Of a DNA stretch of 64,000 bases, positions 248 to 64,000 are shown one piece after another. The DNA lies in the sequence record MK250017.1; one strand, written 5' to 3'. The translations under genes were made by a program, and so were the position numbers. Position 1 is the stretch's first letter. Each line of letters opens with the position of its first letter. The notes beneath the pieces are model-generated. The model saw only the letters and a program-made list of their open reading frames with translations. It did not search any database and was not told the DNA's origin.

Positions 248-576
248 CTAATATAAAATATTTCCGTGGTATACAGCACGTAAAAAGAGGTTGACTTGTA
301 TATTCTATAGACCTACTGTATAATAATATATATGATGTACATGTGAAACACCATGTTCTATTAAGAGTTTAATAAAACTGTGGTTGTTATTAAATTGCAC
401 TGATATTAGATGCATAATATATGATGAATATAATGACGGTACTGTGAAATGACTATTATTTTTAGTTGCTTGGAAACGGCGTACGAAGTTTTTATAATAG
501 TGGAAGTAATGATAAAACAGTTAAATGTAAATCTTTCTGAGACAATGGGGACAACTTGTAGTAAGAGAGTATTTTT

Positions 577-680
577 GTTGATATAGTTTAATGGGAAAAC
601 ACCCAAATCCCAGGGATAAGAGATAATACTTTGAAATAGGTATTAGAAGATTTTAGATGGTTCGATTCCATTTATCAACT
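577..680 (+). ncRNA. tRNA-like RNA with expanded central domain
   Basis: Acceptor GTTGATA/TATCAAC, D arm GTTT-AATGGGA-AAAC, T arm GATGG-TTCGATT-CCATT. 54 nt lie between D and T arms and there is no canonical anticodon arm. Confidence 0.6.
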
Positions 681-689
681 CAAATTAAT

Positions 690-811
690 GAAGTGTGTAG
701 TTTAATTGGTAAAATATCCTTTGAATAGGACTGTGCGCAGATAGAACATAATGTTAGTCATATTAATCGCATTATTGATAATGATGTTGGTTCGATTCCA
801 ACGACACTTCC
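690..811 (+). ncRNA. tRNA-like RNA with expanded multi-hairpin central domain
   Basis: GAAGTGT(690-696) pairs with ACACTTC(804-810). D arm GTTT-AATTGGTA-AAAT, T arm GTTGG-TTCGATT-CCAAC. About 69 nt central insert. Confidence 0.6.
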
Positions 812-1096
812 TAATAAATAAAAAGATCTCGGTAATTAGATAAAACATTATATGAGTGAAGCAACTCACCATAACTGCAGATAAATGAGTGAGGGACATA
901 AGAGTGTATGAAGAAAGATGGACTATGGACACCACCATATAATTGCGTTTTCAATAATAGTAAAGTAAACTTTAGTATAAGTTCCATTAACGCTAAAATA
1001 GAAACATTGTTATTGAAGTCTACTATGCGTGCGATGGTTGAATGAAACCATTGTAGTTCTAAGGCATTGTAAAACGTTTTATTTATTAATTTTTAT

Positions 1097-1170
1097 GGCG
1101 AGATAGCTTAGTTGGTCAGAGCGCAGGATTCATATCCCTGAGGTCGTGTGTTCAAATCACACTTTCGCTA
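1097..1170 (+). tRNA. tRNA with CAT anticodon (elongator Met most likely; Ile2 not excluded)
   Basis: Acceptor GGCGAGA/TTTCGCT, D arm GCTT-AGTTGGTCA-GAGC, anticodon loop TTCATAT (CAT at 1131-1133), T arm GTGTG-TTCAAAT-CACAC, A73. Confidence 0.88.
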
Positions 1171-1198
1171 CTATTATTTTTTGATTGTTTATTTTTAT

Positions 1199-1233
1199 AA
1201 GAGGTATATCATTTTTTGGTATATCTCTTTTTT
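1199..1233 (+). terminator. intrinsic terminator after RNA cluster
   Basis: AAGAGGTATATC/GGTATATCTCTT hairpin followed by a T run. Confidence 0.75.
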
Positions 1234-1250
1234 ATTTAGGAAATAATGTG

Positions 1251-1258
1251 TATCTTTG
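1251..1258 (+). promoter_or_regulatory. Bacteroidota-type -7 promoter element (early)
   Basis: TATCTTTG matches TAnnTTTG, within a context TTTAGGAAATAATGTGTATCTTTGAATTGT shared with four other sites. Confidence 0.7.
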
Positions 1259-1285
1259 AATTGTTATTAATAAAATAGTAATAAA

Positions 1286-1765
1286 ATGAAGAAATATAAA
1301 GTATATCAACTTCGTAGAGAAAACGAAAATATAATTGATGATTATCATGAATCATATGATGCAAAAATGAAAGTTATTGCATCATATGAGATTTCATCTG
1401 ATAGAAATGATCCTGTTATTATATCAGAAGATATATGGCAAATGTGTAATGTTCATTGTTGGGATCATACATGGTCTGATGGACAAGTTGTTAAACGAGA
1501 TGATATTACATTAACACCTACATCTGATTTTGATGGATTTGTTAATAGTGATATTGTAGTTGAAACTGTAAATGGATTATATCTAGCAGAATCATGTGGA
1601 TTTATGAAGGTGGATTCATTGAATTATGCTATGCATAGAATTACTGTAAGATTTCCATTTATCTCTTATTATGATATAAGAAATAAAGAGGATTTTAATG
1701 AAGATTTACTTCGTGATATTCGTAATGAAATTCAGAAAGAATATCAGAAGAGAATTGAAGAGTAA
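1286..1765 (+). CDS. YodL-like domain protein
   Basis: N-terminal KVYQL and C-terminal SDIVV...LYLAESCGF resemble the YodL pattern. TAG-free, TAA stop. Confidence 0.5.
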   Translation: MKKYKVYQLRRENENIIDDYHESYDAKMKVIASYEISSDRNDPVIISEDIWQMCNVHCWDHTWSDGQVVKRDDITLTPTSDFDGFVNSDIVVETVNGLYLAESCGFMKVDSLNYAMHRITVRFPFISYYDIRNKEDFNEDLLRDIRNEIQKEYQKRIEE

Positions 1766-1803
1766 TAATAAACAAATATAAACAATTAAAAAGTAATATA
1801 ATT

Positions 1804-2508
1804 ATGGAAAAGTTTAGATCATTTATTAAAAAGCATTTGGTTATTAGTATTATCATTAGTGTAATTATTTACCCATTATTAATTATTTGGCCTATTGTCT
1901 ATTTTGATAAAATAGTAAAACATAAAAAACTATTATATTTGGGAATATTATTATTTTTTATTTTTATTATATCTGGTATTAAAAGTGTAAAAAATAATAC
2001 ATCTACTGAGTATGATTATGATGCATGTGAACATTATGCAAATATTCTCATTAATAATACAAAAAATGATAATGGTTCCTTTAGCAATATTGATGAAACT
2101 AAATATGAATTATATAGAGATTCTTTACAAGTATCATTTAATAAGTTAAGTGATAATGATAAGGTTGTGATGTTTGATAATTATTTAGAGACAAGTGATA
2201 CGGCTAAATATGCTTTTTGTAGTAATGTAAATATTGGAGAAATTCCATTAAATAAAAATCCATATGATTATGATTCATGGCTGAATGCATGTAGAGAATA
2301 TATTTACAATATATTATCTGCACATCATTTTGATACAGATGAAGCAGATATTACACTTACTGCTCCAGTAAGATTGAGAGTATGGGAACCAAATTATGTA
2401 ATTAGAGGTACAGTAAAATATAAGAACTTATTTAATGCTACAGTAACAAATGAAGTTGCATTTTTATTTAATAGACATGGAGATATGTTAAAGAAAGAAA
2501 TATATTAA
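1804..2508 (+). CDS. membrane-anchored hypothetical protein
   Basis: Two N-terminal hydrophobic segments followed by a soluble domain; 234 aa, TAA stop. Confidence 0.75.
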   Translation: MEKFRSFIKKHLVISIIISVIIYPLLIIWPIVYFDKIVKHKKLLYLGILLFFIFIISGIKSVKNNTSTEYDYDACEHYANILINNTKNDNGSFSNIDETKYELYRDSLQVSFNKLSDNDKVVMFDNYLETSDTAKYAFCSNVNIGEIPLNKNPYDYDSWLNACREYIYNILSAHHFDTDEADITLTAPVRLRVWEPNYVIRGTVKYKNLFNATVTNEVAFLFNRHGDMLKKEIY

Positions 2509-2557
2509 TTTTTTGAAGTTTTTTCCTAGAATATTTTTTTATTTGGAATAAAACATG

Positions 2558-2565
2558 TATCTTTG
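2558..2565 (+). promoter_or_regulatory. Bacteroidota-type -7 promoter element (early)
   Basis: TATCTTTG 46 nt upstream of ATG 2612. Confidence 0.7.
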
Positions 2566-2611
2566 TAATGTAAATAATAAACAAATAATAAACAATTAAA
2601 AAATAAAGATT

Positions 2612-3058
2612 ATGAATACAACAGTTAAGATTTCTCCAGCACAGGTTTTCCCAGTAGCAAATAAGATTCGTGCAGCAAAGCACATCTCTATGAAGGAAGC
2701 ATACGCAGAAGCAAAGGCGCAGCTTATTGCAGAAGCAGAGAATGCAGTGAAGGCTGCAGAGACAGTAGTAGAAACACCTACTAATGTAGTTGAGACACCA
2801 GCTAATATGAAGTTGCATACAGAGTTGGTAGAGAAGATGAAGAACGGAAACGTTAAGTTTGTATTCTTCAATAACAAGGGTAAGAAGATTACAACTACCG
2901 GTACTCTTGATATGTCAAAGGTTCCTACAAACCGTGATGTTCAGGGTCGTAAGACTGCAAAGGATGAGAATACTCAGGTATTCTATGATGTTCGACATGG
3001 TGTATACCGCTCTTATCAGAAGGATAAGTTGGTAGAGATTATTTCAAAGAAGAAGTAA
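2612..3058 (+). CDS. WYL_2/DUF2693-like SH3 beta-barrel protein
   Basis: C-terminal VKFVFFNNKGKKITTTGTL...VFYDVRHGVYRSY pattern. Codon usage (AAG, GAG) differs from neighbouring genes. Confidence 0.7.
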   Translation: MNTTVKISPAQVFPVANKIRAAKHISMKEAYAEAKAQLIAEAENAVKAAETVVETPTNVVETPANMKLHTELVEKMKNGNVKFVFFNNKGKKITTTGTLDMSKVPTNRDVQGRKTAKDENTQVFYDVRHGVYRSYQKDKLVEIISKKK

Positions 3059-3079
3059 AATGTCTTATATATGTTAAAG

Positions 3080-3121
3080 AATAATGGTGAGTTTCTTGTA
3101 AGTAGACAATTCACCATTATT
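3080..3121 (+). terminator. hairpin, probable terminator
   Basis: AATAATGGTGAGTT/AATTCACCATTATT, weak U tail. Confidence 0.55.
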
Positions 3122-3463
3122 CTTATATAATATATAAATCAATTCGAATAAATATAGAAGTGATTTTATTTAATATGTGAATTGATAATTTGTGAAACAT
3201 GTGTCTGACGGAAAGCACATGTATTTTTCGTGCAATGTTCAATTTTAATTAATTTTAATTTTGATAGGTTAAAGGAGTAAACCTATAAGCGCGGAATAAT
3301 AAAGTCGTATTGAAAATCAAATTTTGATTCCATAAAAGTTGGAATATGGTTTTTGAAGGCTAAGATGAAGTTATAAAGAATTTAACATATTATATATGTG
3401 ATATATGTATATGTTATTTCTTTTTCATCGAATAATAAAAAATAACATAGAAACAATTAATTT

Positions 3464-4063
3464 ATGAAGAAAAAAGTGATATTAAAGAAAATTTTATTAT
3501 TTACGCTATTGTTTTTATTACCTTTCATATCAATAAATGCTGCAACTATTGATAGTAATAATAATGCGTATGAAGAAGTAAATGCAAAGACAACAGTAGT
3601 TAAACATACAAAGTCTAGTATTGAAAATTCGTTAGTTGATGAGGCTAGAACATATATCAAGTCGTTATATCCTGGCTGTCCAGATATAATTCCTAGTTAT
3701 ATTGTAAAAGCAGGTTTAGCAAATAATATTGATATTTGTTTTATGCTTGCTCAAACACAGTTAGAAACTACCTTTGGCAAGGCAGGTGTAGGAAGAACGT
3801 GTTCAAGACGTTCATTATTTGGTATCGAGAAAAGATACTATAAAACATATAAAGAAGCAATTAATGCGTATGTAGACGTATTGACTTCAAATTATTTAGT
3901 AAAGGGCCGTACAGAACAACATTTGTTAAATAATTATGTTAATAAAAACGGTCATCGTTATGCTGGTAATCCTAAGTATGAATATTATCTTAAGAAACAT
4001 TATAATACAATTGCATCTACAACAAAAATAAAGCAATTGCAACGCCAGTACAAGAGATTATAA
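3464..4063 (+). CDS. GH73 glucosaminidase-family peptidoglycan hydrolase with signal peptide
   Basis: Basic plus hydrophobic N-terminus; AQTQLETTFG (catalytic Glu motif) and RYAGNPKY (YATD-like). Confidence 0.8.
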   Translation: MKKKVILKKILLFTLLFLLPFISINAATIDSNNNAYEEVNAKTTVVKHTKSSIENSLVDEARTYIKSLYPGCPDIIPSYIVKAGLANNIDICFMLAQTQLETTFGKAGVGRTCSRRSLFGIEKRYYKTYKEAINAYVDVLTSNYLVKGRTEQHLLNNYVNKNGHRYAGNPKYEYYLKKHYNTIASTTKIKQLQRQYKRL

Positions 4064-58423: not shown

Positions 58424-58539
58424 ATTACTTATTATTTTTAATTATTATTTGTTTTGTTACTTAATAAACAATATAAAATAGAGGATATAATTTCTCTTTT
58501 ATATCGTTTTTTAGCATATCTACCTTTTGATTTAACTAA

Positions 58540-58706
58540 GGTCTCTTGTTTCATTTTTCTCATTGTTGTAATAATGTTTTTATAAATAAAAACCTATGTT
58601 TCTTGTTTCACAGACACGCTACTTTTTAGTATAGTTAAATTATTTAACTTCTTTCATCCATAGTTGGTATCTCCGCAAGCGTAAATTCGGGTAAATTCAT
58701 CCCTAT
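58540..58706 (-). ncRNA. putative TnpB omegaRNA scaffold / right end
   Basis: Minus strand: GGG-ATGAATTTA-CCC, ACGCT...AGCGT helix, AGTTAAAT-A-ATTTAACT, GTTTTTAT-TT-ATAAAAAC immediately 3' of tnpB. Confidence 0.65.
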
Positions 58707-58722
58707 TTATATTTTATATTAA

Positions 58723-59856
58723 TTAAATATTTAATTGTCTTAATCCTTCTACTAAAATATTCTAAGCAGCATTATAATCTCTATCAATTAAAGATTTACA
58801 ATGTGGACATATCCATTCTCTTTCACTTAATTTTAAATCTTTATAAATATAACCACAATTATGACATGTTTTAGATGATGGATAGAATCTATCTATAACT
58901 ATTAACTACCTTCCATACCACTTACATTTATATTCTAACTAACGTCTAAATTCAAATAAACTTAGTTCCTATATAGATTTAGCTAATTTATGATTCTATA
59001 ATATACCTTTCACATTCAAATCTTCAATACAGATAACTTGGTTTTCGTTAACTAGTTTTGAAGTGATTTGATGCAAATAATTCTGTCTCTAATTCTTTAT
59101 CTTTTCATGAACTTTAGATAATTTAATTCTTAATTTATTTCTATTGTTACTTCCCTTTTGTTTCTTACTTAACTAACGTTGTAATTTTTTTAATTTCTTT
59201 TCTTGATTTTTATAAAAATGTTTATTTTCATATCTATTTCCATTTGAATCTACAATAAAATCTTTTATTCCTAAATCTAAACCTATTACTGTATCTAAAT
59301 ATTCTTTCTATTGTATTTTACAATCTATGAGAATTGATAAGTAATATTTTCTTGTAGTTGTTTTTACTAATGTTATAGACTAAATATATTTCTAATTATG
59401 ATTTAAATATATCTCATTTTTCCTTGAGCATTTAAATAATATATTCTTTAACTATTTTATTAAAGTTATTCTATTACCTTTTATTTTATCATGTTTATAT
59501 TTAAATATAGTATTTGAAAATTTACAAGTCTATTTTTTATCTTTTTTTGATTTAAATTTAGGATAACCTTTATTAAATTTAAAAAAATTATTATATGCAA
59601 CCATTAAATCATTTAATGACTACTATAAACATACAGAATATACATCATTTAAAAATAAATATTCATCCTGTTTCTTTAAATTAGTAAGATATTTACCTAA
59701 TTGAGATAAAGAACATGTTTGCTTATTCTATTCATACTACATTTTCTTATAATCTAATAATTTATTATATATAAGTCTACAACAACCTAATTGTTTAGAA
59801 ATAAAATCCTCCTAAACATTATCTGGATATATTCTTATTTTAATTGCTTTTAACAT
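58723..59856 (-). CDS. tnpB: RNA-guided endonuclease TnpB (code 15, 377 aa, 17 in-frame TAG), absent from ORF track
   Basis: [30 protein letters not shown] (D 59275), IEDLNVKG (E 59023), CHNC..CPHC zinc finger, DRDYNAA (D 58777). Confidence 0.93.
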
Positions 59857-60007
59857 AATATAATAAAAAATCGTTTATATTTTAATTTGTATAAATTTGA
59901 CGGGTTGATACAAATTATTAATATAAACGATCTATAAATATCTTTAATTATATATTATATTCAAAATTATAAAAATAGTTTAATTCAACCCGTCAAAGTT
60001 TTAAACT

Positions 60008-60033
60008 NNNNNNNNNNNNNNNNNNNNNNNNNN
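60008..60033. other. assembly gap (26 N)
   Basis: Run of N in the sequence. Confidence 1.
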
Positions 60034-60054
60034 ATTTTTGAAATAATGTAAATA

Positions 60055-60267
60055 TTAAAAATTATTGTAATAATTTATTAAATCAGCTTTCATTTCTTTA
60101 CGAAACTGAGTATCTCTCTTTCTATTTCTAATTACTCGATCTTCTGCAATTTCACAATTATAACGTCTCCATTTATTTAAAATAGAACGTTTATACTTAG
60201 GTTTAATTTTACCTTTATTGTCATGCATATAATCATACGCAGCTTGCTCTTTAAAATTATTACTCAT
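60055..60267 (-). CDS. small basic hypothetical protein
   Basis: 70-aa ORF, TAA stop. Confidence 0.6.
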   Translation of the reverse strand: MSNNFKEQAAYDYMHDNKGKIKPKYKRSILNKWRRYNCEIAEDRVIRNRKRDTQFRKEMKADLINYYNNF

Positions 60268-60299
60268 TGTATCTTAAATATAATTTTAGTAATGTCAGA

Positions 60300-61200
60300 A
60301 AAAGAAAAAATTAAACTTCATAAATTTGCGTTTCAAAAATTTGCTGCTACTTACCAAATCTACAAATATGAAGTTTAATCATTTGTATTAATCTATACTG
60401 CAGAAAAATTATTATAGTATAAGTTTCATTGCAATTGAACTTTACAACTATAGTGATAATCCACTTATACCTTCTTTTACTCTAAAGACTTTTATATGCA
60501 ACTTCGACATATGTAATTTATCTACATACCGTTTACATTAAAGTTACTTTATTTCATCATGCTTTTATAACCATATTCACAACCCTCTGTATATCACCGA
60601 TTCATTTCTTTTCATATAGAAATCAGGGTCTTTAAGCCTCACTGTTATTGGCTATAACTATTATCCTCAAGCACTACCAGATAAAGTCTTTTTGTTTTTA
60701 TGGTGCATCTCTCATGCCTCCTTTTATCATAAAACAAACAAAACTAGTAAGACAAATAACGTTTCTTACAACTCCTACGAATTTAACTCCAAAATTAAGA
60801 TACATCTCTTAATATTAAGTTGGACACTTAAATTAAGTGGATAAAGTTGTACGACTTGAAAATATAATCACCAAAAGAATAATAATATTTTCTCAGACTT
60901 TATCATAAACGATTCACTAAATTCTTTTATGGAACTTATTTCTAATTAAATGAGGACTCATTTAAAATAGGTTCTCCCGAAACATGCGGTTTATCCATAC
61001 TCATTTAAAACTTTAAATAAGCGTTGTTTATAGCACTCATCAGAATTTATTATGTATTAACATTTATAACACATCATTTGTATTTAATTATTCTATATAA
61101 CTTATATAGATATAAACACAAATTGTTTAATAATCTAATAAACAAAATTATTAATATTATGTTATCTTAATGTTAATTAAGAAAAAATTTCAAAGAACAC
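60300..61200 (-). ncRNA. candidate large structured non-coding RNA
   Basis: About 0.9 kb without a long ORF, many helices, lying directly downstream of an early promoter at 61220-61227. Confidence 0.55.
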
Positions 61201-61219
61201 TTTGTTTTTAATAACAATA

Positions 61220-61227
61220 CAAAGATA
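61220..61227 (-). promoter_or_regulatory. Bacteroidota-type -7 promoter element (early)
   Basis: Minus strand reads AATAATGTGTATCTTTGTATTGT and points into non-coding DNA. Confidence 0.7.
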
Positions 61228-61276
61228 CACATTATTTTTGAATTAAAAAAATATATTGAAGAAAAAATTAATATTT

Positions 61277-62104
61277 TTATTGAACCCATGCAGATGCATA
61301 TCCATTTTCTACTTTTATAATAAGGACTTCACCATTCAACCATGTATGTTCAAGATCATAACCTTCATCTTCACTTTGCATATCTTTATACTTAGTAAGA
61401 ATAAAGTTTGTAATCTCTTCAATACTTCCCTTATGATATTCAGATGTATTCAATAATTTCAAATAATCAACATACTCTCTTGCATTCTTCATACAAGAAT
61501 CAATATCCTTAAAACATGTAGTATCTATATATTCATTATTTCTATTAATAATAGATGCAACAACACCATTAGCTAACAATTTAGAGATATTAGTAATATC
61601 CTCAAGTTTTTCGAGTTTTTCAAATTCATATTTTAACATATGTTCTGAATCACTATCTCTATAACGTTTAATATTAAGAGTTACTGAATTCCACGTATCT
61701 ACCCATGTTTTAATTGCATCTTCAATATATCCACCAAAATCATTATCACCAAATTCAAAGGTAATCATGAAACTCTTATCAATAATATTATTATCACTAA
61801 GTTCATATGGATCACCTTTAAATTTATGTCCTTGATATAAACCATCCAAATAAGCAGTTGATATAAGATTATTAATATCTGACATTAAAGAAGGCATGAA
61901 TGTTTCTTTTTTATCTTCTGATATATCATCAAGTACAATAGATGTATCAATAATAGCTTCTATATGCTTCTTGTTATCTTTGATATATTGATTTGCAAAA
62001 TCAACAAACTTCTTTCCGTATACATCAATATTCATCTTATTTACACCCTCTGCTAAAGTTTCATTAAGATTTTCTAATTCTTTCTTTATATCTACTTTTT
62101 CCAT
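61277..62104 (-). CDS. hypothetical protein
   Basis: 275-aa acidic ORF. Confidence 0.75.
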   Translation of the reverse strand: MEKVDIKKELENLNETLAEGVNKMNIDVYGKKFVDFANQYIKDNKKHIEAIIDTSIVLDDISEDKKETFMPSLMSDINNLISTAYLDGLYQGHKFKGDPYELSDNNIIDKSFMITFEFGDNDFGGYIEDAIKTWVDTWNSVTLNIKRYRDSDSEHMLKYEFEKLEKLEDITNISKLLANGVVASIINRNNEYIDTTCFKDIDSCMKNAREYVDYLKLLNTSEYHKGSIEEITNFILTKYKDMQSEDEGYDLEHTWLNGEVLIIKVENGYASAWVQ

Positions 62105-62123
62105 AATAAATTTTATTTAAATA

Positions 62124-63059
62124 TTACATTGATCCATCATTTGGCTGCAAACACATAATACCATGTTCTCTCCACATTTTTACTACTTTTGAAGAATCTT
62201 CCAAAACAAATAATACATTATAATATGGTTCAATAAATGTTTTATATAGGTTATACTTACAATCTGGACCCTTTGTAAAATTCTTGTATGGTCTCATCAT
62301 AACCATATCTACATCACCATCCAAATTATTTTTTAACCATGTTTCAGTTGCTTTTCGTATATCAGGTGTATCTTCTCTACCTGTTAAAATAATAACTTTT
62401 ACATTATCATCTTTAATATACTTATTAACTAACTTACAAATTTGTTCACATGGTACATCATTTGTCATTGTATCAGAAGCGCCATTACCATAAAATGGTC
62501 TACCTTGTAAATTAAAACAAAGTGTTGCATCCATATCTACAAGAATACAATCTTTCTTATCCTTATCATATGGAACAAAACTGTTATATTGCTTCTTATT
62601 AAGCTCTGTTGCTATAAAATTTCTATATTGTCTATATGTTCTCTTAATAACAGATTCTCCAATTGGATTTGTTCTCATTGAATCTCGCCTAATACACTCT
62701 TCAACTGAAACATCAAAGAAATCTTTAAATACAAGTTCATATTGATATTTAGTATGTGTATTATTATAATTATCAATTCTATCCTGCATTTCTTTCCAAC
62801 CCTTTGGATTAAGGTTCATATTATCCATAATAATATTTAAACCGTTTTCCATTGATGATTTAAAAAATGCATCTGTCATTTCTTTAATAATGTTTAATTT
62901 TTCTCTTTCCTCTACCCAATACTGTCCAAACATATTTCTAAGAGAATCCCAATTAATTCTAATTCGTTCTGTTGGTTTTTCCTTTGCCCATTGTTCTGCA
63001 TAAGTTGACTTTCCAGAAGCTTGAATTCCCCTTGTTAATATAATTTCTCTTTTTTCCAT
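62124..63059 (-). CDS. pseT: polynucleotide 5'-kinase/3'-phosphatase (T4 PseT-like)
   Basis: RGIQASGKST P-loop followed by a HAD domain with LVDMDATL and TGR. Confidence 0.88.
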   Translation of the reverse strand: MEKREIILTRGIQASGKSTYAEQWAKEKPTERIRINWDSLRNMFGQYWVEEREKLNIIKEMTDAFFKSSMENGLNIIMDNMNLNPKGWKEMQDRIDNYNNTHTKYQYELVFKDFFDVSVEECIRRDSMRTNPIGESVIKRTYRQYRNFIATELNKKQYNSFVPYDKDKKDCILVDMDATLCFNLQGRPFYGNGASDTMTNDVPCEQICKLVNKYIKDDNVKVIILTGREDTPDIRKATETWLKNNLDGDVDMVMMRPYKNFTKGPDCKYNLYKTFIEPYYNVLFVLEDSSKVVKMWREHGIMCLQPNDGSM

Positions 63060-63086
63060 TATTCTTTTCTAATTTTATTTACAATA

Positions 63087-63094
63087 CAAAGATA
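63087..63094 (-). promoter_or_regulatory. Bacteroidota-type -7 promoter element (early)
   Basis: Minus strand reads TTTAGGAAAAATATATGTATCTTTGTATTGT. Confidence 0.7.
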
Positions 63095-63144
63095 CATATA
63101 TTTTTCCTAAATAAAAAATATAAATCTAATTATTTTCCTAAAAA

Positions 63145-63357
63145 TTATTCATTATCCATAGACATTCCTATAGTTGCATTTCTCATACAATCTAAATAAC
63201 CTTTCATATATAATGATTTCATATGTTCATGTAACTTCTTTAATTTATCCGGTATGTCTGTTTTTATATCTTCTGAAATTTTATCATCACCAAATAAAGA
63301 TATAAGTGAAACTCTTGATTTATGATCAGCAATATTTTTTAATTTTTCTATATTCAT
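63145..63357 (-). CDS. hypothetical protein
   Basis: 70-aa ORF. Confidence 0.7.
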   Translation of the reverse strand: MNIEKLKNIADHKSRVSLISLFGDDKISEDIKTDIPDKLKKLHEHMKSLYMKGYLDCMRNATIGMSMDNE

Positions 63358-63368
63358 ATTTTAAATTA

Positions 63369-63977
63369 TTATAAGTTAGACAAGACTAAACCTAAACAAT
63401 ATTCGTTATTAATATCACAAATAAATTTACTAAGTTTACCTTTTAATATTTCAGCGTTTATTTCAAATTCTTCTAATATCTCTTTTTCTTTCTTTATAGT
63501 ATTAATATCAGTTTCTTTCAAATAACTATAAGTATCTTTAGTTTTAAAATTAATATTAGATATTGTATCATTTCTGATAGAATTTATAATTAACATTACA
63601 GATAACTCATATGTATCTTCATTTAATGCTGAACCATGATAACCACATATACCTTTATTTTTCAGTTCAAAAAATACAGGTCCATAACAGTATTTTCCTT
63701 CATGTACAATAGTTCCCAATGATTTCAAACCAAATGTCTTACATATATTAAACTTCTTATCAAGATAATCATTAAATAATTTATTAATAAACATCATCTG
63801 ATATGAAATAAATGTATCAGCATTTAATTCTAATTTAAAATGTGTCTTATCTAAAATATCATACATTAAATCTTGTATATTCATATTACCTAATTCTTCT
63901 TTATATAAAGATGATAAACACATATATAATCTATGTAATGTTTCTTTAATATCATAATTAATATGAACATTTTTCAA
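63369..63977 (-). CDS. hypothetical protein
   Basis: 202-aa ORF. Confidence 0.75.
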   Translation of the reverse strand: MKNVHINYDIKETLHRLYMCLSSLYKEELGNMNIQDLMYDILDKTHFKLELNADTFISYQMMFINKLFNDYLDKKFNICKTFGLKSLGTIVHEGKYCYGPVFFELKNKGICGYHGSALNEDTYELSVMLIINSIRNDTISNINFKTKDTYSYLKETDINTIKKEKEILEEFEINAEILKGKLSKFICDINNEYCLGLVLSNL

Positions 63978-64000
63978 TTTATCTTCATAATAATTTAAAA

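What the first reader, a model, noticed from the sequence alone, without database searches (positions are those of the whole stretch)
60300..61227. Early promoter fires into ~0.9 kb of highly structured non-coding DNA: candidate large ncRNA
Seen: no long ORF and GC above the local spacer level. A TAnnTTTG promoter at 61220-61227 has no gene start nearby. Helices include a 12-bp TTAAACTTCATA/TATGAAGTTTAA (60311/60367), 60421-60442, a long-range 9-bp AAAGACTTT/AAAGTCTTT (60484/60683) closing about 200 nt, GTAAGA/TCTTAC (60747/60764), TTAAGA/TCTTAA (60795/60807) and TTAAATGAG/CTCATTTAA (60946-60965). Known: phages carry large ornate RNAs (ROOL, GOLLD) of unknown function. Inference: a member of such a class or a new one; I cannot assign it by eye.
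Basis: partly seen in the sequence, partly recalled or inferred. Interest (0 to 1): 0.66.

Follow-up and report, generated by a model that had tools for sequence, protein, structure and literature searches.

The report
Large structured RNA in Lak megaphage
A gene-free stretch of about 0.9 kb in a Prevotella Lak megaphage encodes a conserved, folded and very abundant RNA that matches no known RNA family, so it is a new large phage RNA whose job is still unknown.

Summary
The window is Prevotella phage Lak-A1, a roughly 540-kb genome that reads TAG as glutamine. The stretch 60297-61213 has no conserved ORF under table 11, TAG=Q or TGA=W.

- **Transcription signals (minus strand).** Its three other copies in the window sit 11-20 nt before start codons. 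The stretch ends in a covarying hairpin followed by a U-tract.
- **Conservation.** Six lineages keep the core at 82-92% identity. The neighbouring 275-aa protein keeps only about 36%.
- **Structure.** The RNAalifold consensus energy is -101 kcal/mol against -64±5.5 for phylogeny-preserving column shuffles. It has 24 compensatory pairs against 3.9±2.4. Variable peripheral hairpins are rebuilt with other sequences. G-U pairs favour the minus strand.
- **Expression.** In four metatranscriptome runs from three studies, contigs on the stretch carry about 6 to over 100 times the k-mer depth of contigs on flanking genes. Devoto et al. had already noted highly expressed intergenic regions in Lak phages.
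- **Family.** No Rfam family matches (GOLLD, ROOL, OLE, introns). There is no second copy in the 416-kb related record and no hit in 151 Bacteroidales genomes.

Verdict: a real, new family of large structured phage RNA. The function is inferred only.

The parts
60297..61213 (-). Proposed primary transcript of the RNA gene. The 5' end is inferred a few nt downstream of the -7 box. The 3' end is inferred at the U-tract.
   Evidence: Promoter element; hairpin plus U-tract; no conserved ORF; RNA-library contigs cover 60344-61139.
61212..61233 (-). Lak promoter element AATGTGTATCTTTGTATTGTTA, with the Bacteroidetes-type -7 box TATCTTTG at 61227-61220.
   Evidence: It has 4 copies in the window against 0.01 expected, and the other three lie 11-20 nt upstream of ORF starts at 1286, 54462 and 63059. 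The surrounding ~75 nt recur at 33 places in G001. It is invariant in all lineages.
61063..61211 (-). Variable AT-rich 5' leader. Some A-type strains carry a different, longer block here, and L077 carries a shorter one.
   Evidence: Alignment A2 columns 45-255. Summed contig depth in RNA runs is lower here than over the core.
60915..61054 (-). Domain D1: a closing helix around a multi-helix junction. It includes the hairpins at 60999-61022 and 60946-60965.
   Evidence: 46 pairs with 99.2% of cells paired. 7 pairs show compensatory change (1 of 500 shuffles reaches this; slid controls give 0-2). Model R1 scores 155-177 bits in all lineages.
60840..60904 (-). Variable hairpin V2, closed by GAUAAAG/CUUUAUC.
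   Evidence: It folds in every lineage at lengths of about 49 to 116 nt with different apical sequence. Closing pair 417:530 is GC, GU or AU.
60790..60839 (-).
   Evidence: Pair 532:544 changes AU to GC. V3 is a 7-bp hairpin in A-type and a 10-bp hairpin of unrelated sequence in B-type, L050, L053 and L056.
60738..60778 (-). Hairpin containing GUAAGA/UCUUAC.
   Evidence: Pair 601:623 is GC in 8 sequences and CG in 7. Outer pairs change between GU, AU and GC.
60549..60737 (-). Domain D4, the most conserved core. A closing helix surrounds five nested helices (four branches, one with two inner hairpins), including the AAAGGAGG hairpin at 60702-60724.
   Evidence: 45 pairs are 100% paired, but 41 never vary. 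Substitutions avoid the predicted stems: 5 of 90 paired columns vary against 25 of 93 unpaired (p=1e-4). Model R2 scores 217-240 bits. This region has the highest contig depth in RNA run X10.
60487..60548 (-). Variable hairpin V4.
   Evidence: Pairs 847:863 and 848:862 are compensatory. L077 reduces it to an 8-bp hairpin, and L069 carries a different sequence.
60417..60470 (-). Domain D6: an outer helix GUAUAAGU/ACUUAUAC with an inner hairpin and a 28-nt invariant block.
   Evidence: Pair 906:959 changes GC to AU and pair 911:954 changes AU to UA. The invariant block is seen.
60398..60403 (-). Invariant palindrome CUGCAG inside an otherwise variable segment.
   Evidence: Alignment A2 columns 975-980 are invariant while the flanks vary. 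Its role is unexplained.
60297..60378 (-). Terminal 68-nt hairpin (60311-60378) with an invariant 11-nt apical loop (60344-60354), followed by a U-tract (60297-60310). It looks like an intrinsic terminator.
   Evidence: Six pairs show compensatory change and none is mispaired (one has alignment gaps in two sequences). A U-run follows in all lineages. The simple terminator scan misses it because its loop is too long for the scan. RNA-library contigs of X3 and X8 end at 60344, and X3 has adaptor letters abutting that end.
60055..60267 (-). Downstream neighbour: a small basic 70-aa protein of unknown family. It is syntenic with the RNA in all lineages that have the RNA.
   Evidence: No Pfam or PHROG match. 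No separate promoter element lies between the hairpin and its ATG.

Best explanation
The stretch is a gene for a large non-coding RNA of the Lak megaphage, read from the window's minus strand.

Shown:
- It lies behind a phage promoter element that elsewhere drives protein genes.
- It has no conserved reading frame.
- Its core is more conserved than the neighbouring 275-aa gene.
- Its helices are maintained by compensatory and wobble changes.
- Its peripheral hairpins vary in length and sequence around an invariant core.
- In RNA libraries from three studies, the assembled pieces on it carry far higher depth than pieces on flanking genes.

Inferred:
- The primary transcript runs from about 61213 to the U-tract near 60300.
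- A shorter, more abundant species of about 60344-61075 may be produced by processing.

Inferred by analogy only: it acts in trans during infection as a stable folded RNA. It could be a scaffold, an RNA-protein particle (possibly with the adjacent small basic protein), or a self-assembling RNA like GOLLD and ROOL. It is less likely to be a message or a simple regulator.

It belongs to no described RNA family.
For: Identity: the stretch is 100% identical to Lak-A1, and it is held by Lak-A2, C1 and B1-B9.

Code: TAG=Q opens a 377-aa TnpB next door, as published. No ORF appears in the stretch under any tested code. The longest open stretch, on the plus strand, has no start codon and is broken by a 2-nt indel in B-type genomes.

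Promoter.

Conservation: the core is 82-85% identical in B-type genomes, L050, L053 and L056, and 92% in L077. Individual blocks reach 85-97%, against 47-75% per 60-nt bin in the adjacent gene. That gene's protein is about 36% identical.

Structure: 171 pairs, 21 of them compensatory. Against 60 column shuffles within identical variation patterns, energy is -101.3 versus -64.1±5.5, and compensatory pairs number 24 versus 3.9±2.4 with a maximum of 13. Domain D1 has 7 compensatory pairs, reached by 1 of 500 shuffles. An unguided scan for covarying stacks recovers mostly the same helices. The variable hairpins refold in each lineage.

Strand: energy is -101.3 on the minus strand against -75.3 on the plus strand, and there are 301 versus 187 G-U cells.

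Expression: contig depth over 60433-61097 against contigs on the flanking genes at 61348-63026 is:
- X3: 17 against 0-0.5
- X8: 36-42 against 0-3
- X10: 437-3500 against 15-42
- X14: 132-290 against 10-12

Devoto et al. report highly expressed large intergenic regions in Lak-A1 and A2 metatranscriptomes.
Against: - Only about six independent lineages are available, all within 18% divergence. The most conserved domain (D4) has almost no varying pairs, so its helices are unproven.
- The RNA evidence is from assembled contigs, not reads. It shows no strand, no true ends and no proper quantification. Only one sample shows a discrete end, at 60344.
- That end lies in the apical loop of the terminal hairpin, which does not fit a simple terminator.
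- In runs X10 and X14, contigs bridge the RNA and the downstream gene, so read-through or co-transcription occurs.
- More distant relatives carry the flanking genes without this stretch beside them (L046, L075, L078).
- The function is untested.
Confidence: 0.82

Rival explanations
1. It is a very long structured 5' leader that regulates the downstream small genes (the 70-aa and 68-aa proteins) in cis, with the terminal hairpin plus U-tract acting as an attenuator.
For: No promoter element lies between the hairpin and the ATG at 60267, which is only about 30 nt downstream. The next promoter-like copy in relatives lies downstream of the two small genes, about 25 nt before the 230-aa gene that follows them. 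RNA-library contigs in X10 (60102-60471) and X14 (60184-60492) span the boundary.
Against: A conserved multi-domain core of about 700 nt is far larger than known leaders. In X3, depth drops about 8-fold between the contigs that meet at 60338/60344 (17.3 to 2.1). In X10, the core reaches up to 3500 against 129 for the contig over the gene. In L046, the homologous small gene sits 39 nt behind another gene with no such leader.
Confidence: 0.1
2. It is a highly diverged member of a known large RNA family (GOLLD, ROOL, OLE, a group I/II intron, or a TnpB omega RNA) that the models fail to detect.
For: It resembles these in being phage-borne, large, ornate and abundant. A TnpB gene lies 0.4 kb away in this genome.
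Against: No Rfam match appears even at E up to 10 on this genome, or at E up to 5 on four divergent homologues. The nearest tRNA genes are 59 kb away. The TnpB element is an insertion private to A1-type genomes, whereas the RNA is present in genomes without it. There are no flanking exons.
Confidence: 0.04
3. It is a DNA-level element (replication origin or packaging site), or a decayed or unconventionally coded gene.
For: It is AT-rich, has many inverted repeats and has no ORF.
Against: There are no tandem repeats or iterons. The GC skew does not turn here; the skew peak is near 35 kb. The pairing is strand-asymmetric with many G-U pairs. The RNA is abundant. Conservation exceeds that of the adjacent 275-aa gene, and indels are not multiples of three.
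Confidence: 0.03

Closest known systems
GOLLD RNA (Rfam RF01998) and ROOL RNA (RF03087)
   Same: Large (about 0.6-0.8 kb), multi-domain, phage- or prophage-borne and highly expressed, with no known biochemical function. Each has a conserved core with variable peripheral hairpins. Both are reported to form RNA-only homo-oligomers (bioRxiv 10.1101/2024.12.08.627333, seen).
   Different: No covariance-model match. The host here is Bacteroidota, not Firmicutes or lake bacteria. It is not next to tRNA genes. Oligomerisation is untested here.
'Highly expressed large intergenic regions' of Lak phages (Devoto et al., bioRxiv 10.1101/356790)
   Same: Same genomes (Lak-A1/A2) and the same kind of observation: regions up to about 1.5 kb without genes, among the most highly expressed parts of the genome.
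   Different: That work gives no coordinates in the text I could read, no structure, no strand, no family and no comparison across lineages. I could not verify that this particular region is among those shown in their Figure S8.
OLE RNA (RF01071) and raiA motif RNA
   Same: Large or abundant structured bacterial RNAs of unclear function. OLE works with small partner proteins encoded next to it (from my own knowledge).
   Different: No model match. Those are chromosomal in Firmicutes, not phage-borne.
TnpB omega RNA
   Same: A structured RNA near a tnpB gene.
   Different: An omega RNA overlaps the 3' end of tnpB. This RNA lies beyond the 5' side of tnpB, is separated from it by another gene, and exists in genomes that lack the element.

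Membership tests
GOLLD (RF01998) | Match to the family covariance model | tested here: not met
   No match at gathering score or at E up to 10. None in four divergent homologues at E up to 5.
ROOL (RF03087) | Match to the family covariance model | tested here: not met
GOLLD/ROOL | Frequent adjacency to tRNA genes in phages or prophages | tested here: not met
   The window's only tRNA genes are at 168-1171, about 59 kb away. The genome is a phage.
GOLLD/ROOL | RNA-only homo-oligomeric assembly | not testable with these tools
   This needs in vitro transcription plus SEC-MALS or cryo-EM. An invariant palindrome CUGCAG at 60398-60403 is only a lead.
OLE, HEARO, RNase P, tmRNA, 6S, group I and group II introns | Match to the Rfam models | tested here: not met
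   ARAGORN finds no tmRNA.
TnpB omega RNA | Overlaps the 3' end of tnpB and the element's right end, and travels with the element | tested here: not met
   tnpB is at 58723..59856(-), so its 3' end faces away from the RNA. The element (58576-60060) is absent from Lak-A2, C1, B-type genomes, L050, L053, L056 and L077, all of which keep the RNA.
Structured non-coding RNA (generic) | Conserved secondary structure supported by covariation above a phylogeny-aware null | tested here: met
   The result is weak for domain D4.
Structured non-coding RNA (generic) | No conserved reading frame | tested here: met
   Indels of 1-2 nt lie inside conserved blocks. The mini-ORF behind the GGAGG motif loses its ATG in L077.
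Structured non-coding RNA (generic) | Transcript detected, with defined strand and ends | tested here: inconclusive
   The stretch is present at high depth in contigs of four RNA libraries. Strand and ends cannot be read from contigs. One sample shows an end at 60344.
Bacteroidetes-type promoter | A -7 box TAnnTTTG, recurring upstream of genes | tested here: met
   Activity and timing ('early') were not tested.

The most novel reading that the evidence does not exclude
This RNA founds a new class of megaphage-specific ornate RNA. It would either self-assemble, for example through the invariant CUGCAG palindrome and the invariant 11-nt terminal loop, or form a particle with the adjacent conserved basic 70-aa protein. 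It would be made in large amounts to remodel the infected Prevotella cell. On this reading it is an RNA machine or compartment component rather than a regulator.
Probability: 0.25. Interest if true: 0.88.

Novelty: new variant of a known kind. Interest (0 to 1): 0.72.

Why it matters
Large ornate RNAs are rare, and almost all of them have turned out to do something unusual: ribozymes, RNA cages, membrane-linked particles. Lak phages are among the largest known phages and are common in the guts of people and animals that carry Prevotella. Their highly expressed gene-free regions have been an open observation since 2018.

This work fixes one of those regions as a defined RNA gene. It gives the strand, the promoter, a domain map, two covariance models and six lineages. 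That makes the question directly testable by mapping existing strand-specific reads, transcribing the RNA in vitro, probing it and imaging it. It also gives a search handle for other megaphages.

Tried and rejected
- **Rfam.** Gathering and permissive thresholds on the window and on four homologous loci gave nothing relevant.
- **Other codes.** TGA=W gives no ORF. TAA=Q opens frames everywhere, as expected in 25% GC DNA, and is not shown by the genome.
- **Single-sequence folding.** The z-scores are weak and similar on both strands, so they are not informative. A test using the single-sequence MFE pairs was swamped by spurious A-U pairs.
- **Search for more distant homologues.**
  - Two 17-mer scans of IMG/VR and one 18-mer scan of JGI metagenomes gave only A-type and B-type copies.
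  - Model R1 found one copy in the 416-kb record G001.
  - R1 and R2 found nothing in loci of more distant relatives.
  - R2 found nothing in 151 sampled Bacteroidales genomes. That is 'not found in those searched', not 'absent'.
  - The ENA records of the distant relatives could not be searched whole.
- **The 70-aa neighbour.** It has no Pfam or PHROG family. The AlphaFold model has pLDDT 70 and is just two helices, so I made no fold search.
- **Origin-like features.** There are no tandem repeats or iterons.
- **Literature.** I found no paper naming a Lak RNA family.
- **Masked letters.** I did not look up the masked N stretch at 60009-60033, and I kept it out of the reads call.

Full report
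**What the window is.** The stretch 60040-61280 is 100% identical to Prevotella phage Lak-A1 (MK250015-18). It is 99.8% identical to Lak-A2 and 99.3% to Lak-C1, and about 79.7% to the nine baboon Lak-B genomes. The window's own assembly is not held; the nearest record is a 416-kb IMG/VR fragment, G001. Lak phages are published as using code 15, TAG=Gln. The window shows this itself: reading TAG as Q opens a 377-aa TnpB/OrfB_IS605 gene at 58723..59856(-) with 17 in-frame TAG codons.

**Checking the observation.**
- No ORF of 60 aa or more lies in 60268-61276 under table 11, TAG=Q or TGA=W.
- With TAG=Q, 59857-61276 is the largest part of the window not covered by an ORF of 80 aa or more.
- The promoter box is TATCTTTG on the minus strand at 61227-61220. 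The octamer alone would occur by chance, but it is embedded in a 22-nt element found four times in the window against 0.01 expected.
- The other three copies end 11-20 nt before the start codons of ORFs at 1286(+), 54462(-) and 63059(-, a polynucleotide kinase-phosphatase). The surrounding ~75 nt recur 33 times in G001.
- So this is a genuine phage promoter type, and here it faces 945 nt without a start codon. All three other copies drive TAG-free genes. That fits expression before the code switch but does not prove it.

**Conservation.** A pairwise alignment with Lak-B3 shows a mosaic.
- 60415-60497 is 97% identical, 60543-60785 is 85-92%, and 60892-61060 is about 90%.
- These blocks are separated by short stretches full of substitutions and indels.
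- The adjacent 275-aa gene (61277..62104) shows only 47-75% per 60-nt bin, and its protein is about 36% identical.

I used homologues of the two flanking proteins to fetch further lineages from public assemblies. This gave L050/L051, L053, L056/L057 and L077, plus several A-type strain variants from a metagenome scan. Over the aligned core, identity to the window is 92% for L077 and 82-85% for the others. Three more distant relatives carry a homologue of a flanking gene but not this stretch beside it (L046, L075, L078).

**Not coding.** The longest stop-free stretch is on the plus strand (60542-60844, 100 codons with TAG read through). It has no start until its last third, translates to low-complexity sequence, and is interrupted by a 2-nt indel in B-type, L050, L053 and L056. 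Indels of 1 and 2 nt occur inside conserved blocks. The 13-codon frame behind the AAAGGAGG motif loses its ATG in L077.

**Structure.** RNAalifold on 15 sequences (A2, in window minus-strand sense) gives 171 pairs. 21 of them show compensatory double changes, and there are almost no broken cells.

RNAalifold itself favours compatible columns, so I repeated the same pipeline on 60 null alignments. In each, columns were permuted only among columns with the identical pattern of variation across sequences. This keeps the phylogeny, conservation and gaps.

| Measure | Observed | Null |
|---|---|---|
| Consensus energy (kcal/mol) | -101.3 | -64.1±5.5 (z -6.7) |
| Pairs with compensatory change | 24 | 3.9±2.4 (max 13) |
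| Broken cells | 7 | 16±4 |

Further support:
- An unguided scan for stacks of at least 5 fully compatible column pairs with covariation recovers mainly the same helices at the top of the list.
- On the tool's own counts, domain D1 (60915-61054) has 46 pairs, 99.2% paired, and 7 compensatory pairs. Only 1 of 500 shuffles reaches that, and slid controls give 0-2.
- Domain D4 (60549-60737) is 100% paired, but 41 of 45 pairs never vary. Its helices are therefore compatible, not proven. Its substitutions avoid the predicted stems: 5 of 90 paired columns vary against 25 of 93 unpaired.
- Three peripheral hairpins (V2, V3, V4) fold in every lineage with different sequences and lengths. V2, for example, ranges from 49 to 116 nt.

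A conserved core with variable peripheral hairpins is the usual anatomy of large structured RNAs.

- 60311/60367, 60747/60764 and 60946-60965 are supported by compensatory changes.
- 60795/60807 is supported by hairpin replacement.
- 60421-60442 conflicts with the covarying helix 60417-24/60463-70.
- The long-range 60484/60683 pairing is broken in B-type genomes.

**Strand.** The promoter orientation, the U-tract after the terminal hairpin and the pairing statistics all point to the minus strand. The energy is -101.3 on the minus strand against -75.3 on the plus strand, and there are 301 against 187 G-U cells. Many one-sided A-U/G-U/G-C changes would be C-A mismatches on the other strand.

**Expression.** Devoto et al. 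state that Lak genomes have non-coding regions up to about 1.5 kb. [quoted passage not shown] They assign no RNA class.

Independently, 18 public runs hold the stretch, and four are on record as RNA libraries from three studies. Laying their Logan contigs on 60034-64000 (3,967 letters, N stretch excluded) gave the depths below. Columns give depth bins over the RNA core (60433-61097) and contigs over the flanking genes (61348-63026).

| Run | RNA core | Flanking genes |
|---|---|---|
| X3 | 17 | 0-0.5 |
| X8 | 36-42 | 0-3 |
| X10 | 437-3500 | 15-42 |
| X14 | 132-290 | 10-12 |

DNA carry-over would be even across a phage genome, so the excess is RNA.

Contigs cannot give strand, ends or true levels. 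One observation bears on the ends: the X3 and X8 contigs (same sample) both begin at 60344, and X3 has adaptor letters abutting that position. This suggests a real molecule end. The position is the 3' edge of the invariant 11-nt apical loop of the terminal hairpin. Depth is also lower over the variable 5' leader (61098-61230). A processed species of about 60344-61075 is therefore possible. Contigs in X10 and X14 bridge into the downstream gene, so some read-through exists.

**What it is not.**
- Rfam 15 gives only the three tRNA matches at the far end of the window at gathering score. At E up to 10 it gives nothing meaningful in 58500-61400, and it gives nothing on the homologous loci of four lineages. 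That excludes detectable membership of GOLLD, ROOL, OLE, HEARO, RNase P, tmRNA, 6S and group I/II introns.
- It is not the TnpB omega RNA. The TnpB element (58576-60060) is an insertion private to A1-type genomes, and its 3' end faces away from the stretch.
- It is not origin-like. There are no iterons or tandem repeats, and the GC skew does not turn here.
- Models R1 and R2 find one copy in G001 and none in 151 sampled Bacteroidales genomes.

**Mechanism.**
- Shown: promoter type, absence of a frame, conserved fold and abundance.
- Inferred: a primary transcript from about 61213 to the U-tract at about 60300, ended by a 68-nt covarying hairpin. That hairpin's invariant loop suggests it is more than a terminator.
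- Inferred by analogy only: a stable trans-acting RNA made in bulk during infection. It could be a scaffold or particle, perhaps with the conserved basic 70-aa protein encoded directly downstream. That protein is syntenic in every lineage with the RNA and has no known family. Alternatively it could be a self-assembling RNA like GOLLD and ROOL. The invariant CUGCAG palindrome in a variable segment is a lead for intermolecular pairing.
- The main rival is a giant cis-acting leader for the two small downstream genes, which have no promoter element of their own.

**Limits.** About six lineages with at most 18% divergence are available. The RNA evidence comes from contigs only. No experiment was possible. 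The masked N stretch at 60009-60033 was neither filled nor looked up.

Noticed in passing
window 58576-60060 (tnpB 58723..59856, minus strand): This is an IS605-family TnpB element whose gene has 17 in-frame TAG codons, so it is adapted to the phage's TAG=Gln code. It is an insertion present only in Lak-A1-type copies. It replaces the last ~10 codons of the 70-aa protein. The nearest relatives in species genomes are 65% identical (a 2-kb contig of a 'Clostridium sp.' MAG, possibly a misbinned phage piece) and 42% identical (a Paludibacteraceae MAG). The masked N stretch at 60009-60033 lies in its left end and was not looked up.
   Followed up: partly
window 577-680 (+): Rfam calls a 104-nt tRNA here (38.9 bits) that ARAGORN does not report. 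It is probably one of the intron-bearing tRNAs that Devoto et al. mention for Lak phages.
   Followed up: no
window 62124-63059 (-): This is a polynucleotide kinase-phosphatase (kinase plus HAD phosphatase, T4 Pnk-like). It lies two genes upstream of the RNA, behind the same promoter element. It is 81% identical in B-type genomes. The 275-aa protein between it and the RNA evolves very fast (about 36% identity).
   Followed up: partly
window 61070-61166; loci L069, L070, L072: Some otherwise 96-98% identical A-type strains carry a different and longer block in the RNA's 5' leader. RNA-library and DNA contigs often stop at this boundary.
   Followed up: partly
window 60370-60630; loci L048, L049, L052, L054, L055, L058, L059: Many public metagenome contigs end inside the RNA gene, 100-330 nt upstream of the 70-aa gene. 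The likely cause is assembly-graph bubbles, where invariant blocks flank strain-variable hairpins.
   Followed up: no
window 60344-60354 and 60398-60403 (-): The terminal hairpin has an invariant 11-nt apical loop, GUAAGUAGCAG. An invariant palindrome CUGCAG sits in a variable segment nearby. The GCAG of the loop could pair with the CUGC of the palindrome. Contigs from one RNA sample end exactly at 60344.
   Followed up: partly
locus L046 (ENA scaffold, 169 kb), L075, L078: These are more distant Lak-like phages. They encode homologues of the 70-aa or 275-aa proteins in different gene neighbourhoods, without the RNA at those places. Whether the RNA lies elsewhere in those genomes could not be searched.
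   Followed up: partly
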